The notes under the pieces were generated by a model, which saw only the letters and a list, made by a program, of their open reading frames with translations, had not been told where the DNA came from and ran no database searches. The translations under genes were made by a program, and so were the position numbers. Of a DNA stretch of 64,000 bases, positions 5,950 through 34,314 are shown piece after piece. Each line of letters begins with the position of its first letter. Position 1 is the stretch's first letter. Source of the DNA: Bigelowiella natans CCMP2755 (Eukaryota > Protista > Cercozoa); contig ADNK01003331.1 in assembly GCA_000320545.1 (NCBI GenBank), positions 22,577-86,576 on the forward strand, in the 5' to 3' direction.

Positions 5950-6673
5950 ACACTTTGGAAATGTAGTTTTTCATCATTGTTTCATTGTTTCCTGTGTGTT
6001 TTTTCTTTACCCGGAAAACATCTGTACATCACATTGTTCTTGTTCTTGTTTCGTACACTGCAAATATCTCGTTACATTTTGGAAATGTAGTTCTTTGTCA
6101 TTGTTCATTGTTCTTGTTCTTGCACAACAACGCCAATCAATGACCAAGTCATGCCATTTTGGCAAACCAGCTAGTTGATTTGCTAGTCACAGTCCTCACT
6201 GAAACCAGTTCGAGGCACTGCATTTTGCACGCTGCAAGTGTCTTGCAACACTTTGGAAATGTAGTTTTTCATCATTGTTTCATTGTTTCATTGTTTCAAT
6301 GCCGACCTGGCCAAAACGTTCAATCAAAAACAATTTTCTGAGCTGTCAACGCATGTTTGTTCCTCAACGGGAAACTTTTTGCATTGTCAGCCCCATGTTC
6401 ATGTTCGAAGGTGCAGTGCATCGTGCTCGTCGTCCAATCGATCCAGCGTTCAAAGCACACACGTGACAACTTCACTCGCAGGATCTGTGGCGCACCCCAA
6501 GTTCAAATCACAACAGCCAGGCAGTTGCGTCGTTGCTTTGGGCGGTGTCGCACAGGCCACCCTCCAGCCCTGCGCAGCAACAATGCTGGAATGCTGGAAT
6601 GGCAGTCCAGCACTGGGCACGCACCTTGGGAACAATGAGGACAATGATGAAAAACTGCATTTCCAAAGTGTTG
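5950..6673. repeat. Local ~40-bp repeat family ACACTTTGGAAATGTAGTTTTTCATCATTGTTTCATTGTTTC, three direct copies and one inverted copy
   Basis: Direct copies at ~5950-5991, ~6074-6113 (degenerate) and ~6246-6298; inverted copy at ~6629-6673 (reverse complement caacactttggaaatgcagtttttcatcattgtcctcattgttcc). Confidence 0.85.
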
Positions 6674-7580
6674 GGTTCACCTTCACATCGTGTTTCACAG
6701 CAGCCAGCGACCGTTGCATCATGGCGCTGCTCGGTGTGGCTTTCACGTTCAACGTGCTTTCCAGTTTTGGCACCGCTAGACCGTCAGCGAGCGAGCCAAT
6801 TTTGACAGCTGCACAGGAAGCAATGTGAGGAAACTCCGGACAGAGAAGTGCCGCCCATCCATGCCAGCACGCGAGCCTTGGCGCGCGCCATGATGGACAC
6901 AGCAACACACTGCGTGCATGTCTGTCATCGCCCTGCTCTTTGTGCATCGTTTTTTGGTGCTTGCATTGGGAAGGTGTGGATCATTGCAGGAGGCACTCAC
7001 GTCAAGACGCACGATGGCCAGGTCGTGGTGTCAGATGGTCAGGTTCACGTTCTCCAGTTCTCACGCGGACACGCTAGCTGGCCATGTGGTCAGTTTGCGA
7101 CCACCAAGTGCATGTGAGCGCGCATGCTCATGCACAAGTGCAAATGGTGGTGCACGTTGTGCTTCATCACGTCTCACATTTTCATGTGAGCATGCTCATG
7201 CAGGTTCAGGCTGTCGTCACTGCAGCTTGGCTGGTCACATGGGGGCATGCAACGTGAGTTGCATGCCCAGAAACGTGGTCACAGGAGGGGGCGTGTGCAG
7301 CTGGAAACAATGATCTCGGTCAACTCCCAAACCGTGGATGTTTCCAGGAGCACCCTCGGCACTTTGCTTGCGACAAGTGGTCGGCCTGCGTGTCACAATG
7401 TCATGGGGAAAAATGGCCTGCACTTTTCCCAATGTTTCAGGCAACTGCGACTGCGCAGCATGTTGCTGCTGGGGATGCTGTGTGCCCAGCACGTGACGTG
7501 CATTGGCGCGCAACCAGCTGGTTCAGCATGCTCCAAACGACCCGCAAGCACGCGGTGAGCTTTCCCCACTGCAAGGGGAA
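6091..7580. other. TpA-erased tract 1 (probable relic of repetitive or foreign DNA, identity unresolved)
   Basis: By eye only 5 TA dinucleotides in ~1.5 kb (about 6172, 6184, 6262, 6777, 7075), four of them in CTAG. Overlapping Tyr-free ORFs in several frames. Confidence 0.8.
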
Positions 7581-27781: not shown

Positions 27782-29161
27782 CGCCTACAACAGACCAAGA
27801 AGGTGATGAGCGAAGTAGAAGTATTATCAAAGAGCGTAGTATGAGTCGTATGAGTCAAGTGACCGTTTTTGTTTAAGAAACTCTGCAGCCTATTCTCACG
27901 GGATCCCTGAGGTTATTTCACGATTTGATGGATGAATTAAGATAGGAAAGGAGCAAGTACGATGACTTGTTCTGTCTCCTTACCCCATCATTAATTGTCC
28001 AGAGGTTGCACGAGAGTTGCTTCTCCTTTTCTCCCAGCGCCCATCTGTAATAAAGATTTTGCGGAATCTTCGTCAACCAACTAACGACGATCGCAACGAC
28101 CACAGCCGTCCAATTTGTTGTTGTGATACCTCGTATGTTGGCTTATCTCTCCTAGGAGTTTCACGATGTCCTTGCGCGTAGAAATTTCATCTTTGTGCTC
28201 GGCGCTCTGTTTCTGCATTGTTATTACTACTGCTGCTGTGTTGTTGTTATCGTGGTGCCTCCTCCTCCTCCTCACAGGCTTAGGAGTATCTGACAAATCT
28301 ACTACCTACTACGACGCACGTTGGGAACTTACTTACACATTGGAATGTTCGAACAAATGGAAGAAATTTTATATCTGCGACAACGACTACAGTCCATTTT
28401 GAGAAAGAAAACACTAGAATGTGCTATGAAAGGCTACTCAGTTCCCAGTTTTCTCTCAACGTACGACACCTCAAATGTGATGTCGTTCAAATGAAAAAGC
28501 AACAGACAGCCGAAAGCTTGTGAGATCAAATGGCGGCTGGTGAAATGAACCCTGCTAGCCTGGCTAGCTGGCTTGATGGCTTGTGTCATGCTGGAAACTC
28601 TCTAGCTCTGCTCAACGTGACGTGCACGCAGCAATGACAACAGCTAGATCAAACAAATGCCATTGCAGCTGTGCCAGCCTCCTGGCCATGCCTAGATGCT
28701 GGTGTGATTGCACGCGATCGTTTGTGGAACCCGTGTGTCAATTTGCTGGACCCCAAGCTAGCAAGCGCAGCCAAACTTGAACCTTCAGCCAGCGAGCGCA
28801 GCGCTTCGAACATGCCTTGAACACGTTCTGGAGACGACATGTGAAGCATTTTCATGTGTGCGGGTGACGTGCATGCGATGCATCTAGCTGACAGCTGGGC
28901 ATGCCAGCATGCCAGCATGCTGGCTGCACCGGCCAGTCTAGCAGTGCACGTCTAGGTCCAGAGGTGTCTAGGTGTGTGTGCAATGTGTGTGTGGATCATG
29001 GAATCATGTCGCCGTGTCCATTGTGGATGACGTGATGCAGCACGTGTGAAACCTAGCAATGTGTGCACGTGTCGACGCGTGTCAAAGTGAAACACACCAG
29101 CAGCAACAGCATGGGACATGCATGGAAAAATCATTGCAATTGACATTGAAACCATCAGATG

Positions 29162-31982
29162 TCACACAAATGTCACCAAAATGCAATTGAAGTGCATCAT
29201 GCATGACAATTGCAATGCTGTCCACGGTGCTTGGGCACACTTGAGCTGATGCGCTGCGCAAAATTTTTTTCCAACGTGTCCTTTGCCGCACCACTCGCAC
29301 CAATGTTTGTGTCTACTAGAGCTGCCACTTTTGTGTGGATTGAGGAGTTTCCTGAGCTCTTGGAACCCGGCGTCTGGTGTGACATGATCACTTCGCCTGC
29401 CAAGTGTCTGAAAACAACTGTGAAAAAACGCCAAATTTTTCCGTTCAAGTGCGTCTGTCCTAGCAAATTTCAGCCCGCCTGAGCAAGCTGTCAGCTTCTG
29501 AACCTCATCAGATGAGTCATCAGAATCCACGTTTGATTCAATTGGTCCAGGATTCTCTGAAAAACAGTTGGAATGAGCAGCACTTCTTCCACATTGCTCC
29601 CCCATGTGATTGACCCAAGTGTGAGCACAAGGAGTCACAATCGTGCTAGGAAGACCCTTCATCTGCACGTCATCCACACCTGGTTCTCCATTTCCAACAA
29701 GCACACACAAACAAAAATTTTCAACACGATGATTGTCATGAATTGCACACACACGCACACGCCTCACACCACACGTGTGCATGCGCATGTTGTTCGTTGT
29801 TCTCACCCTTCTTCCATGAGCGCCTCCATGAAATCCGAATGTTCCTTCCACATTTCTTCACAAGTCAGTTCTGGCCCGTCTCCTGGCCAAACCATCAGTC
29901 TGCGATGCATTTCAACCCAGCTTCTTGCCGATTTTTGCAACAGCTCGCCTCTCCCAGGATTGACTTTGTGCAGGCGTTCGAAGTCCCATTCCTCTGAAAT
30001 CTGCAGCATCTTCGCCATTTTCGGAGTGGCCCAAGTGAATCCTCCTGCTGCTGATCCATCTTTCACCTCACACGCCTGAACTTGAACTCAGTCGTGTTGA
30101 ATGGAGCTGCTTGCAAGTCGTTTTCCATCTGTTTCATGCCCTCCTGAGGGGTGCCTGGCTCTGTGTTTGTGATGTCAGTGAACACGTGAGCTGTGATCTC
30201 ATCGTGAAGAAACCGAAACACGAGGTGCATGTTTTCACTCCAGCGACGTTCCATCGGTGCAAATGGAAGAAGATCAATGTGCTGCCTTCCATGCTCTTTG
30301 AGAGGTCCCGAGAAGCGCTGCTTTTCTGCAGCCCACTTCACAGTCATGTCCGCTCGATCCTCAGCATGACAGCAACAGCACAAGCAGTTGTGGTTTTTCA
30401 AATGGAAACCAACCACACCGTGGATGATTTTCATCCATTTTGCGTCTCCAGTGTGGTGCAGCCTCACTTTCCTCTGGCACCCTTTCCACATGAAGCCATC
30501 CTCTTGCAAGTCCTTGAGTTCAGTGAACAACGGAGTGAGACATTCTTGAAGCATCGGTCCATTTTCATTGCCAACGAGAAGCGCCAACACGCACTGTCTG
30601 TCCTCTCTGTGCATTGGGCCCTCATTGAGAATTCCAAATTGAAACGTGACAGACTTGAAAGAATTCCCTGTTCCACGCCCATCACCTTCAAGCAGTGTGT
30701 CATGCGTCGTGCAATTTTCGAGCCCTCGATGCTCAAAAATGTGCTTGAAACACTTCTCTGGATGCACCACGAAATGCTTTGCATCATGAGATGTGTCAAA
30801 CTTGGACTTTGTGGCCAAATTCATTTCACTTTGCACTTTCTTGACCGAGTGCGTGGAAGGAACAGCATGCGAGAGCATTCGAACTTCGTGGAGTTTTTTT
30901 TTGGATGGTCCACTGTCAACCAAGTGCAAAAACTTGCCAACCACATTGGCTGCTTTGGTGCCTTTTCGAAAAGCCACCTTCACGGAGCATTCTTCTTCAA
31001 CAGCGAATTCCAATGCTCCACATCCACAGAGCTGTGTGCACCATTTTTCTGCTGCCCGAGATGTCAAGCGAGAGATTTCAGATTCTGCTGCTTTCCGGCG
31101 CGCAATCAAAGCGGTGCGTTTGATTTTGGAATCATCCTTTGGCTTGCGTTTTGGACCCATGATCAAACACGAACTCCCCATTTTTTGCTTCATTGAAGAG
31201 AGCTTGGCTCGAATTTTCTTCGAAGCCCTGCCTCTGCATTTGGAACGATCTGATGCCACTTGATGGTTCTTTTGTGCAGAAGACTTCGATGCCTGGAGTT
31301 GGATGGAGAGCTGAGTGGCTTTGCTGTTGAGGGATGACAGACGCTTTTCCGACTTGGACTTCTGAGCCTTGAGCTTGGAGCTGCACAGCACCCATCGTTT
31401 TTTGTCGGCGATCGACATCTCTGACAATGCCGAGTTTCAGCACTTCTGTTTCTTTTCTGAGAGCCTCAACTTTTTCTGTGAGCTTCCTCGCTTTGGCTCT
31501 GGATGCAGTGGCTGAAGCAATGGCATCGGTGCGCTGCATCACTGTTTCCTGCTGCTCTTTTTGGGCGCGCACAAGCTCTTTTGGATTTTCAATTTTTCTA
31601 GCTGCCTCTTTGGCCGACCTTCTCTCTTTTTGCTCAGCTTCAATTCAATGTCAAGTTCGTCAGATTTTTTTTTTGCCTCATGAACCTCCGACATTGCCTC
31701 GGTGGCTTTCTCTTTCCACCTCGAAACCGCAGGGCTCGAAGAATGAAGTTCGGCTGACTTTCCACCTCGAAACCGCAGGGCTCGAAGAATGAAGTTCGGC
31801 TGACATCTTTTTTGATTTTTTTCCGGAAGCACAATTGCCATCACAGTTGTGCCTGGCACCAAGCAAAGGGTCTTCTCGTGGGTTTTCGCCATGATGTCCC
31901 TTGTGTTCGAAGGACACGATCCTTCGCAATGTCGAAATCCCGCCCGAAGCTGGGGGAACGTCTGCTCAGAATGTGCAAGCAA
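29162..31982 (-). pseudogene. RAG1/Transib-superfamily DDE transposase, frameshifted and TpA-mutated, one 113-nt intron (29806-29694)
   Basis: Ordered motifs EGDGRG (D at 30681-30683), LALLVGNE, TGDAKWM..G (D at 30444-30446), NCLCCCC (CxxC), MHLVFR, IVTPCAHTWVNHMGE (cf. RAG1 ITNYFHKTLAHVPE), DALERKN (E at 29444-29446), C-terminal CEWCGK...HQLKC finger. Frameshifts near 31760, 31560, 31420 and 30070. Confidence 0.8.
31712..31803. repeat. Exact 46-bp tandem duplication within transposase 5' region (frameshifting)
   Basis: ctttccacctcgaaaccgcagggctcgaagaatgaagttcggctga at 31712-31757 and 31758-31803. Confidence 0.9.
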
Positions 31983-32272
31983 GCGTCATGAAATCAACAA
32001 ACTGACACCGAAAACTCTGCAAACAATCAAAACACAATTCTCTTTTTCTCTCGCAAGAGAGATTGAATCGAACACTGCATTTTTGTCGAACCTTGTGTTC
32101 TCCTGCTCGAAGCAGGGAAAGCAATTTCACCAGGTTCATCGCCTCTTCCACGACCATGAGAGCCCTCCACCCCATTGCAGGCGCCTCCGAACTTTCAAGT
32201 GAAAAAAAAAATGTCAACAAGTGTTGATTCGGATGTTTTTTTTTGCGTGATTTCACCTGAGCGAATTTTCAA

Positions 32273-33136
32273 ATGAAAGACATTTGGCACAGCGGTGGGT
32301 GGGTGTTCACCCCAACGTGTCAATTCGAGCAAGCAATGAGGGGAGATGGGGCCCGAGCTCGGATTGCACGGAGCCGAGGCATCCCAAGGGCGCTTCGCCT
32401 GGCAGCAGAGCAAAGGGAAGAATCAACATTGAAAAATGCCCTGCTGTCAATTCGAAGATGCGAAAAAAAACTCCAAGCGAGGGAGAATCGTCGTCATCTC
32501 AAGCGCAGGATTTCACGCAAAACGTGCAAGACGCTTTTCGAGGAGAAACAAAGTTGCAAATGCGACAGACACGGACCAGGGGCCATGATCAACAATGCAG
32601 TGTTTGGATCACAGCAGGCATTGAAAAGATGCACCCTTGGGAAAAGAGCCACAGCTTCTTTCAGTCTTCCCATCTCGAAGGAACACTTTCTCCAACTTTG
32701 GAAAGGATGCGCGAAGGTGGAGATGATGTCCATCATGGAGAGCAATGACACAGAAGGTGTCCTGTCAGCAACCATGGATGGTGAGAGGCAATGAGACACG
32801 TCGAATGAGCTGGCAGAAGCACTTGGAATTGAGCCAAACGAGGGAAATTGGGTGATTCGCAGAATGTGTGGATTGGACCCTTTGAAGAGGAGAGATTGCA
32901 GTTGCATTCACGTTCAAAAGTCTCACGCTGATGAAAAAAACACAAAGGTGACGTGGAAGAGTCAAACACTTCGACAGATTGACATTCGAGGGACGGAAAG
33001 GGTTGCATCGAAGAGCAGAATGACATTTCGTTTTCCTGGAAACGTTGCGCCTTGCTCAACTGAATTGAATGCTGAACAAAGGCCAAAGTGTCAGGAGCTC
33101 AACGCCAAGAAAGCTGAGAAAGCTTCCAAAAGGTGA
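32273..33136 (+). pseudogene. Second transposon-borne ORF (~287 codons, one internal TGA at 32792-32794), function unknown
   Basis: ORFs 32273-32794 and 32852-33136 are in the same frame, separated by a single TGA. Protein-like composition, no Tyr, divergent from the transposase. Confidence 0.5.
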
Positions 33137-34314
33137 GTTGATTGTTGAAACTGGTCAAAGCAACATTCACCACTCAATCTGTGATGCGTTTGATCAGAAA
33201 TCGGAAGAGGAAGAAAAAATCTTCTTCGAACCAGCAGCTTGCACACATCAATGAGCATCGAGTTAGATCGTCCCAGCCTGTGGTGATGGCACCAAGTGTC
33301 AGTCAGAAGCGAAGTTTCATTGACAAAACCATCAGAGGCAAGGTTCCTGCTGCTTTTTGTGTTGCTGTGTCTGTCACAAATGAGCTCGAGGCTCAGCTCG
33401 AAGCGAACATGTGACAGCATTGCTGAGCCAGCACGCTCATGCTGATTTCTGGGCTTCCACAGCTAGCTTTGTGACCCAAACATGGCAAACATGGAGAAAT
33501 GTGATTGATGATGTGTTTCAAAACAGCTGCGCTGCGATCACATCAGCGCTGCGATCGATTTTCATGCTGCTGCGTTGCTGGTGTAGTGCTAGCGGTAGCA
33601 CAAATTGACATCCGTCGACATGTGCATGTTGCTGTCCAGCTAGCTAGCTCCAGAGCTGTGCCAGCTGTGGCTAGCTAGCTGGTGTAGCTGTGTCCGCTCT
33701 GACCAGCGTAGCTAGCTAGCATCATCTAGTCATTGCAGTCATTCCTCCATTCAGCCATCCAAATGTGGAAATCTGTGTGCTTTGTCATCATCATCATCAT
33801 CATCATCATGCATCATTGGTGCATGCGCTGGCACAATGATGGTCATCACATCTAGACATCTGTCTCGACATGTGCTCTAGCGTTTGCGCCATGCCATGCA
33901 ATGTGTGTTGATGCATGCATGAGTGACAATGGCATTGTTTTTGTGCAAAATCTTGGCGTGCTACTGTCACGTACGTGAAAATCTGTGTCATCGCACAACA
34001 TGCCAGCACTAGAACATGCGAGTATTCATCGAAGCTACATGCGCATGCACGTCACAGGCTAGCAGGTAGAGCTCACTAAAGACACAGTAAACATAATCTA
34101 GTTATGTGCATTGTGCATGTACATTGTACATGCACATGTCTACAAATGTGCCAGAGTTATTTAGGGGTGTTCGAACTGATGAATTCATCAAACAAGGGAC
34201 TGTGACAATGAGAAACAACGACATTGCAAGTAATCTTTTAAGTGTTAATAACATCATAGTTGCATGTTGCATGCGCATCTGGCCATCTACAATCAAACGC
34301 AAACCGTATCGTAG

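What the first reader, a model, noticed from the sequence alone, without database searches (positions are those of the whole stretch)
29620..29810. Direction of mutation is readable: intron acceptor TAG->TGG and conserved Tyr->Cys in the transposase
Seen: ORF 29803-30066 ends at GAAGG|GTGAGA (donor 29806). 113 nt later a T-rich tract ends ...GCTTGTTGG|AAATGGAGAA. Splicing there is exactly in frame (MEEG-NGEPG...IVTPCAHTWVNHMGE), but only if TGG (29696-29694) was TAG. Codon 29629-29627 is TGT at the position of the Tyr in the RAG1/Transib T-x-Y-x-H-x3-4-H zinc motif. Inference: both sites point to TA->TG, and the mutator disables elements by destroying splice sites as well as codons.
Basis: partly seen in the sequence, partly recalled or inferred. 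Interest (0 to 1): 0.8.

Follow-up and report, generated by a model that had tools for sequence, protein, structure and literature searches.

The report
TpA-erased Transib-like transposon: direction confirmed
A dead jumping gene in the alga Bigelowiella natans has had almost every TA rewritten to TG or CA.

Summary
The donor GG|GTGAGA (intron starts at 29806), a 113-nt GT-rich segment ending TGG (29696-29694), the in-frame junction MEEG|NGEPG and codon TGT (29629-29627) are all as described.

No copy in the genome keeps TAG or TAT.
- At the acceptor the five copies read TGG x3 and CAG x2. At the codon they read TGT x2, CAT, CAC and CGT. These are the two products of TA->TG/CA.
- All 13 aligned external homologues have Tyr there (TAT or TAC in the DNA read), in T-P-Y-[AC]-H-x4-H.
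- One homologue is collinear across the junction without a gap, so the 113 nt must be removed.
- Conserved Arg CGN codons are untouched (42 of 42), which excludes CpG decay.
- TA observed/expected is 0.00-0.07 in the element and 0.7-1.2 in the flanks.

The intron is specific to this family. A paralogue and an external homologue lack it.

A structure model of a homologue matches the RAG1 core (Z 22.5) and HzTransib (Z 20.5).

TpA->TpG/CpA hypermutation in B. natans was already shown by mutation accumulation (bioRxiv 10.64898/2026.01.13.699255). Earlier follow-ups of this scan reached the same conclusion on other DNA of this genome. The finding is real and neat, but a corollary of known work.

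The parts
29066..33624 (-). One dead copy (4,559 bp) of a Transib/RAG1-like DNA transposon, with only 10 TA dinucleotides left
   Evidence: Copy boundaries come from the other genomic copies. TIRs CA[CA/TG/CG]TGTCGACG are present at both ends. TA o/e is 0.00-0.07 against 0.7-1.2 in the flanks.
29807..31427 (-). Main transposase exon. It holds the catalytic-core motifs EGDGRGTG and HHTGDAKW plus C-x2-C, and is split in this copy by a private 1-nt deletion near 30076
   Evidence: ORFs are. Copy C218 has a continuous 783-aa ORF. The deletion is seen in alignment A1. A homologue's model matches the RAG1 core at Z 22.5.
29694..29806 (-). 113-nt spliceosomal-type intron, GTGAGA...T-rich...T[TA->TG]G. 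The acceptor AG is lost in this copy (TGG at 29696-29694; the mutated base is 29695)
   Evidence: All five copies carry the segment. The acceptor is TGG in window, C3043 and C2605, and CAG in C365 and C218. Removing the segment gives gap-free collinearity with P0003 and with paralogue C1189.
29225..29693 (-). Second transposase exon, carrying T-P-[Y->C]-A-H-x4-H, the ALERxNL block and a C-terminal CxxC...H zinc finger
29627..29629 (-). Codon TGT (Cys) at the position of the family-invariant Tyr; the ancestral codon was TAT
   Evidence: The copies read TGT, TGT, CAT, CAC and CGT. This position is Y696 in P0002, invariant in 13 homologues. The homologue codons are TAT and TAC.
29222..29224 (-). 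Former stop codon TAG, now TGG (CAG in copy C3043), so the frame reads through to the TGA at 29164-29162
   Evidence: This is the only in-frame TGG/CAG dimorphism in exon 2. It lies just after the zinc finger, where the homologues end.
32273..32794 (+). Remnant of a conserved second gene of the element, divergent from the transposase; function unknown
   Evidence: 37-41% identity to intact ORFs in environmental relatives L028 and L026. No Pfam match.

Best explanation
Window 29066-33624 (minus strand) is one of at least five dead copies of a RAG1/Transib-fold DNA transposon in Bigelowiella natans. After each copy inserted, the host's TpA-specific hypermutation changed essentially every TA. It became TG when the A of the sense strand was hit and CA when the A of the other strand was hit. 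This happened independently in each copy. In this copy that process turned the acceptor TAG of a family-specific 113-nt intron into TGG, so no AG is left. It turned the invariant Tyr codon TAT of the T-P-Y-A-H-x4-H motif into TGT (Cys). It turned the stop codon TAG into TGG, and it mutated the TA inside the terminal inverted repeats. What is shown: the states in all copies, the residues in homologues, TA erasure with CpG untouched, and the fold. What is inferred: that the 113 nt were really spliced (no RNA evidence) and that the H-x4-H pair is the zinc site equivalent to RAG1 H937/H942. The enzyme is unknown. The preprint proposes an adenosine deaminase acting on DNA.
For: (1) Five-copy alignment: the acceptor is TGG x3 and CAG x2; the codon is TGT x2, CAT, CAC and CGT.
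(2) Family-wide: 128 sites are CA/TG dimorphic, and all six possible splits among three copies are about equally common (13-21 each). Only 2 invariant TA remain against 138 invariant CG. TA o/e is 0.00-0.08 in every copy.
(3) Window profile: TA o/e is 0.00-0.07 at 29-33 kb and 0.7-1.2 in the flanks. CG o/e is the same inside and outside.
(4) At the 5 columns where at least 75% of external homologues have Tyr, the 21 copy codons are TGY 12, CAY 8, CGT 1 and TAY 0. At the 21 conserved-Arg columns all 42 CGN codons are intact.
(5) In-frame test: 12 of 12 CA/TG sites at codon positions 1-2 inside the real exon-1 coding sequence are TGY/CAY. The only TGR/CAR ones lie upstream of the coding sequence or at the expected stop.
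(6) Site 29315-29314 shows all three states: TA in the window, TG in three copies and CA in one.
(7) External homologues have TA o/e 0.57-0.65, with TAT/TAC at the motif.
(8) Junction: P0003 ...ITEEAEGIPGMDDFKSKGLP... aligns without a gap to ...LMEEG|NGEPGVDDVQMKGLP.... Paralogue C1189 reads MEGG-KGLPG as a continuous ORF.
(9) Fold: the model has pLDDT 86. RAG1 core scores Z 22.5 (404 residues, 3.4 A), HzTransib 20.5 and BbRAGL 20.5; the next family, P element, scores 12.2.
(10) Mutation-accumulation lines of B. natans show TpA->TpG/CpA directly.
(11) The genome is B. natans: JGI model Bigna1/142364 equals the C1189 ORF.
Against: No RNA evidence for splicing of the 113 nt. The closest relatives lack the intron, so it could in principle be an insertion that made the family non-autonomous.

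At the Tyr codon one copy has CGT and one has CAC, each needing a second change under the TA model. Simple parsimony at that one codon slightly favours CGT (5 steps against 7). The family-wide rates and the invariant Tyr in homologues override this.

79 sites have CG as one state, so some ordinary CpG change, or double hits, also occur.

No target-site duplication could be recognised.

Residue-level equivalence of the H-x4-H pair with RAG1 H937/H942 was not aligned here.
Confidence: 0.9

Rival explanations
1. The CA/TG dimorphisms are ordinary decay of methylated CpG (CG->TG or CG->CA). On this reading the ancestral acceptor position was CGG and the ancestral codon was CGT (Arg), there was never an AG acceptor, and the reader has the direction wrong.
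For: CG is one step from both TG and CA. 79 of 207 such sites still show CG in some copy. At the codon one copy has CGT, and parsimony there slightly favours CGT. This was my own first reading.
Against: TA o/e is about 0 while CG o/e (0.6-0.8) equals that of the flanks. There are 138 invariant CG against 2 invariant TA. All 42 CGN codons at conserved-Arg columns are intact, while every conserved Tyr is C, H or R. Homologues have Tyr, not Arg. CGG gives no acceptor although the 113 nt must be removed. The likelihood ratio for the acceptor pattern is about 1e8 in favour of TA. The direction has been shown experimentally.
Confidence: 0.02
2. The 113-nt segment is not an intron. It is an insertion that broke the transposase in the founder of this family, and the copies then spread using a transposase supplied in trans. 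The GT...AG look would be coincidence.
For: Paralogue C1189 and external homologue P0003 have an uninterrupted ORF here. L028 carries both TIRs, so it is genomic DNA. There is no RNA evidence. The segment is GT-rich low-complexity sequence.
Against: The boundaries are exactly GT and (T/C)AG, with a strong donor G|GTGAGA and a T-rich 3' tract. Removal restores the frame and gives zero-gap collinearity with P0003. All five copies covering the site carry the segment and none lacks it. No intact intron-less helper of this family exists in the genome.
Confidence: 0.08

Closest known systems
TpA-specific hypermutation of integrated foreign DNA in Bigelowiella natans (Mettrop et al. 2026, bioRxiv 10.64898/2026.01.13.699255)
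   Same: Same organism and same signature: TpA->TpG or CpA only, a GC-ward bias, and TpA-depleted, CpA+TpG-enriched clusters. Among TpA-depleted coding sequences, DDE-endonuclease and reverse-transcriptase domains are enriched. The direction was shown directly in mutation-accumulation lines.
   Different: The preprint measured two viral insertions (a giant-virus region and a virophage region) that are only partly depleted: the giant-virus region has Rho_TpA 0.45 and the virophage region is not depleted. This element is saturated (TA o/e about 0.02). The preprint does not mention introns, transposases, Tyr, stop codons or Transib.
Transib transposase, RAG1 core and ProtoRAG (HzTransib 6pqx, mouse RAG1 5zdz/4wwx, BbRAGL 6b40)
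   Same: The fold matches over about 400 residues (Z 20.5-22.5). Invariant D...D, then C-x2-C 20 residues after the second D, and H-x4-H about 240 residues later. This mirrors RAG1 D600, D708, C727/C730 and H937/H942 (PMC4914335). TIRs start with CA and the transposase is a single large protein.
   Different: No sequence-level match to Pfam or to PDB chains, even with profiles. There is a long N-terminal coiled coil and a C-terminal C2H2-like finger. A conserved second ORF is present. The TIR CATATGTCGA is unlike the CACAGTG-type heptamer (from my own knowledge). No 5-bp target-site duplication was found. Only 36 cluster representatives match among 1.84 billion proteins.
Repeat-induced point mutation (RIP) of fungi
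   Same: A host process that riddles repeated or foreign DNA with transitions at one dinucleotide, independently in each copy, destroying coding capacity.
   Different: RIP is C->T, mostly at CpA, and drives sequence towards AT and towards TAA/TAG stops (established knowledge). Here the change is A->G (equivalently T->C) at TpA, drives sequence towards GC, and erases TAA/TAG stops: 3.7 per kb in the element against 64-76 per kb in the flanks.

Membership tests
B. natans TpA hypermutation target (Mettrop et al. 2026) | Changes are confined to TpA and yield TpG or CpA | tested here: met
   128 CA/TG dimorphic sites, random splits among copies, and one site with TA, TG and CA together. Conserved Tyr codons have all become TGY/CAY.
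B. natans TpA hypermutation target (Mettrop et al. 2026) | [quoted passage not shown] | tested here: met
   TA o/e is 0.00-0.07 and TG and CA o/e are 1.2-1.9 at 29-33 kb. The flanks have TA o/e 0.7-1.2.
B. natans TpA hypermutation target (Mettrop et al. 2026) | Organism is Bigelowiella natans | tested here: met
   JGI model Bigna1/142364 (P0001) is identical to the ORF on contig C1189 of this genome.
B. natans TpA hypermutation target (Mettrop et al. 2026) | Elevated de novo mutation rate at this locus in living lines | not testable with these tools
   Needs the mutation-accumulation calls at this locus. With only 10 TA left, few targets remain.
Transib/RAG1 superfamily | RAG1-core fold: RNase H-like catalytic domain with the large zinc-binding insertion | tested here: met
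   The P0004 model has pLDDT 86 and pTM 0.86. Foldseek gives E 1e-10 to RAG1. VIA-align gives Z 22.5 with 404 residues at 3.4 A to RAG1 500-1007, Z 20.5 to HzTransib and Z 20.5 to BbRAGL, against 12.2 for P element.
Transib/RAG1 superfamily | DDE triad plus C-x2-C and H-x4-H zinc ligands at RAG1-like spacing | tested here: inconclusive
   Invariant D380, D460, C480, C483, H698 and H703 in P0002 numbering. The spacings D-20-C and H-5-H compare with RAG1 D708-19-C727 and H937-5-H942. The catalytic Glu was not pinned down and no residue-level superposition was available.
Transib/RAG1 superfamily | Significant sequence similarity to known Transib or RAG1 proteins | tested here: not met
   No RAG1 or Transib hit from Pfam or from PDB sequence and profile searches.
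Transib/RAG1 superfamily | 5-bp target-site duplication and CAC-type TIR termini | tested here: inconclusive
   TIRs begin CA[TA]TG, which is CATATG in the intact relative L028. No matching flanking duplication was seen in three copies with both ends. The flanks may themselves be mutated.
Spliceosomal intron | GT...AG boundaries and exact in-frame removal that restores the homologous protein | tested here: met
   The donor is GTGAGA. The acceptor is CAG in two copies and TGG in three, both derived from TAG. The junction is collinear with P0003 without a gap and with C1189.
Spliceosomal intron | Observed spliced transcript | not tested

The most novel reading that the evidence does not exclude
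The TpA-erasing process is not peculiar to this B. natans strain. Two relatives of this transposase from environmental metagenomes, P0010 on L030 and P0014 on L029, are only 31-39% identical to anything in this genome. Both show the same signature: TA o/e 0.12-0.19, CG o/e about 1.05 and Tyr 0.3-0.5% of residues. This rare RAG1-fold transposon family, with a coiled-coil N-terminus and a conserved second gene, may therefore be a recurrent target of a wider, undescribed protist defence. Its conserved Tyr, stop and splice sites could serve as a built-in read-out of that defence in uncultured organisms.
Probability: 0.3. Interest if true: 0.6.

Novelty: new member of a known kind. Interest (0 to 1): 0.3.

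Why it matters
The finding gives independent, sequence-only confirmation of the direction of an unusual AT-to-GC hypermutation that has so far been reported only in one preprint. It shows what the process looks like at saturation in a transposon. Every Tyr codon becomes Cys or His. TAA and TAG stops vanish, which creates long spurious ORFs on both strands. A TAG splice acceptor is lost in three of the five copies, and the TA inside the transposon's own end repeats is changed.

Two practical consequences follow for annotating this genome. Long ORFs inside TpA-free islands are not evidence of genes. Cys/His dimorphism between copies marks former Tyr.

It also places a RAG1/Transib-fold transposase in a rhizarian alga. 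That is of some interest for the deep history of the RAG1 fold, though it needs a proper phylogeny.

Tried and rejected
- CpG decay was my first reading after the five-copy alignment. I rejected it after the dinucleotide counts and the conserved Tyr/Arg codon test.
- Sequence-based identification of the transposase failed. Pfam on the window ORFs and on intact homologues found nothing relevant. PDB phmmer and profile searches returned only coiled-coil and C2H2 zinc-finger noise. Only the structure route worked.
- I looked for alternative in-frame AG acceptors in the 113-nt region. There are none (read).
- I looked for a less-mutated copy with TAG or TAT. None exists: all seven copies or fragments have TA o/e of 0.08 or less, and the only paralogue, C1189, is erased too.
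- I looked for a target-site duplication and found none convincing.
- Pfam on the second ORF gave nothing.
- A literature search for Transib in Bigelowiella found no papers.
- The exons were always handled as separate references.

Full report
**What is at the coordinates**

Read on the minus strand, the ORF 29803-30066 ends ...CTC ATG GAA GAA GG|GTGAGA. The G of the GT is at 29806 and the TGA stop lies inside the donor. A GT- and T-rich stretch of 113 nt follows, ending ...GCTTGTTGG (TGG = 29696-29694). Joining 29807 to 29693 gives MEEG|NGEPGVDDVQMKGLPSTIVTPCAHTWVNHMGE in frame. Codon 29629-29627 is TGT. No other AG in the stretch gives an open frame.

One addition: the break between this ORF and the 454-aa ORF 30063-31427 is a 1-nt deletion private to this copy (column 25).

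**The element**

- Searches of the window's own genome find at least five other copies or fragments, 87-93% identical. They are on contigs C218, C365, C1847, C3043, C2605 and C453.
- These copies delimit a 4,559-bp element at window 29066-33624 on the minus strand.
- The terminal inverted repeats read CA[CA/TG/CG]TGTCGACG.
- Copy C218 keeps a continuous 783-aa frame up to the donor.
- One distant paralogue (C1189, 44% amino-acid identity) is the only other family in the genome.
- The genome is Bigelowiella natans. The JGI model Bigna1/142364 (P0001) is identical to the C1189 ORF.

**Which way did the mutations go?**

In the five-copy alignment most differences are paired: TG in some copies and CA in others. 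My first reading was CpG decay (CG->TG or CA). The counts refute it.

- There are 128 sites that are CA/TG dimorphic. All six possible splits among three copies are about equally frequent (13-21 each), so the copies mutated independently.
- Only 2 invariant TA remain, against 138 invariant CG. TA observed/expected is 0.00-0.08 in every copy, while CG o/e is about 0.7.
- Along the window, TA o/e is 0.00-0.07 at 29-33 kb and 0.7-1.2 in the flanks. CG o/e is the same inside and outside.

**Functional constraint gives the direction**

- At the five alignment columns where at least 75% of external homologues have Tyr, the 21 codons of the B. natans copies are TGY 12, CAY 8, CGT 1 and TAY 0.
- At the 21 columns with conserved Arg, all 42 CGN codons are intact.
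- Inside the real coding region of exon 1, 12 of 12 CA/TG sites at codon positions 1-2 are TGY/CAY, which derive from Tyr. The TGR/CAR sites would have been stops in the ancestor. They lie upstream of the coding sequence (codons 29 and 56 of the C218 frame) or at exon-2 codon 157, exactly where the protein should end.
- Site 29315-29314 shows TA in the window, TG in three copies and CA in one.
- The ancestor therefore had TA at these sites, and each TA went to TG or CA.

**The two sites of the finding**

*Acceptor.* It reads TGG in the window, C3043 and C2605, and CAG in C365 and C218. With the empirical state frequencies, the pattern is about 1e8 times more likely from TA than from CG. A TAG ancestor is also the only option that supplies an AG.

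*Codon 29629-29627.* It reads TGT (window, C365), CAT (C218), CAC (C3043) and CGT (C2605).

- A profile search of 1.84 billion representatives found only 36 relatives.
- In the alignment of 13 longer ones, the Tyr of T-P-Y-[AC]-H-x4-H is invariant (Y696, H698 and H703 in P0002 numbering).
- Its codon is TAT or TAC in the homologue DNA read, which has normal TA o/e of 0.57-0.65.
- CGT and CAC each need one further change. That weakens simple parsimony at this single codon but not the overall inference.
- Three more exon-2 positions (codons 34, 40 and 43) are C/H dimorphic where homologues have Tyr or Phe.

**Is the 113-nt segment an intron?**

- Paralogue C1189 reads straight through (MEGG-KGLPG) in one ORF.
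- Homologue P0003 is an uninterrupted ORF on a contig that carries both TIRs, so that contig is genomic DNA.
It does the opposite. P0003 ...ITEEAEGIPGMDDFKSKGLP... aligns to ...LMEEG|NGEPGVDDVQMKGLP... without any gap. The 113 nt therefore correspond to nothing in the protein and must be removed.
- The boundaries are exactly GT and [T/C]AG, the donor is strong, the 3' tract is T-rich, and all five copies carry the segment.
- I read it as an intron specific to this family, with about 0.9 confidence.
- RNA evidence is lacking.

**RAG1/Transib**

- Sequence methods see nothing.
- An AlphaFold model of the core-only homologue P0004 has pLDDT 86 and pTM 0.86.
- It matches the RAG1 core at Foldseek E 1e-10. 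VIA-align gives Z 22.5 with 404 residues at 3.4 A against RAG1 500-1007.
- HzTransib and amphioxus BbRAGL both score Z 20.5. The next family, P element, scores 12.2.
- Invariant D, D, C-x2-C (20 residues after the second D) and H-x4-H mirror RAG1 D600, D708, C727/C730 and H937/H942 (PMC4914335).
- I could not make a residue-level superposition, so the 'zinc motif' label is inferred.
- On fold this is a Transib/RAG1-superfamily transposase. On sequence it is an unclassified, rare branch.

**What is known**

Mettrop et al. (bioRxiv 10.64898/2026.01.13.699255) ran mutation-accumulation lines of B. natans.

- They found about 1000-fold hypermutation in two integrated viral regions.
- The changes were almost exclusively A->G or T->C, and all such changes fell on TpA.
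- They also report 124 TpA-depleted, CpA+TpG-enriched clusters. Among TpA-depleted predicted coding sequences, DDE-endonuclease and reverse-transcriptase domains are enriched.
- They propose an ADAT2-like DNA adenosine deaminase as the enzyme.
- The preprint does not mention introns, transposases, tyrosine, stop codons or Transib.
- Earlier follow-ups in this scan reached the same 'real but known' verdict on other islands of this genome. I checked the preprint myself.

**Consequences seen in this copy**

These follow from the data, although 'disabling' is an inference.

- The acceptor AG is lost.
- The invariant Tyr, and every other conserved Tyr, is replaced.
- The stop TAG has become TGG, giving read-through.
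- The TA in the TIRs has changed.
- TAA and TAG are almost absent in all six frames: 3.7 per kb against 64-76 per kb in the flanks. This explains the many long spurious ORFs on both strands.
- Two of the five copies became CAG and keep a usable acceptor. Splice-site loss is a by-product of hitting every TpA, not a separate mode of action.

**Verdict**

The process is already known, and this is a new, well-characterised example of it. Interest is modest.

Noticed in passing
window 32273-32794 (+); L024:5080-5925 (+); L028:401-1150 (-); L026:3-599 (-): The element carries a conserved second gene of about 200-250 aa, divergent from the transposase. It is 37-41% identical between B. natans copies and two intact environmental relatives and has no Pfam match. 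It also shows Tyr->Cys/His (RRMYG against RRMCG).
   Followed up: partly
L030 (ENA ERZ23491953, P0010) and L029 (ENA ERZ21854029, P0014): Environmental relatives that are absent from this genome (31-39% identity) show the same signature: TA o/e 0.12-0.19, CG o/e about 1.05 and Tyr 0.3-0.5% of residues. P0021, P0022 and P0035 are also Tyr-poor. TpA erasure may act in other, unnamed organisms.
   Followed up: partly
window 29222-29224 (-): The transposase's ancestral stop codon TAG is now TGG (CAG in copy C3043), so the frame reads through for 19 more codons to a TGA.
   Followed up: yes
window 33613-33624 and 29066-29077; L028 ends: The TIRs read CA[CA/TG/CG]TGTCGACG in the B. natans copies and CATATGTCGATCAT in the intact relative L028, so the TA inside the TIR has itself been mutated. 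No target-site duplication could be recognised in three copies with both ends.
   Followed up: partly
window 29066-33624: Only 10 TA remain in 4,559 bp. Six of them are in CTAG and nine are followed by G. This agrees with other readers' notes that CTAG is refractory.
   Followed up: partly
window ~30076 (-): A 1-nt deletion private to this copy (TTCA-GGCG against TTCAGGGCG in the others) splits the transposase ORF. Every other copy carries its own indels of 8, 11 or 34 nt, or larger insertions.
   Followed up: yes
window 6001-7000: A second TA-poor stretch: TA o/e 0.16, CA o/e 1.95 and GC 0.49. It is probably another hypermutated insert.
   Followed up: no
window 28000-29065 and 33625-34100: TA depletion extends a few hundred bases beyond the element's TIRs (TA o/e 0.58 and 0.26 in the adjoining 1-kb bins). 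Either the mutation spreads into the flanks or the element sits inside older mutated DNA.
   Followed up: no
G000:C1189 (L023:1922-4673, minus strand): The only paralogous family in the genome (44% amino-acid identity) is intronless at this site and equally TA-free from about 2 kb to beyond 8 kb of the contig. JGI model Bigna1/142364 covers part of it.
   Followed up: partly
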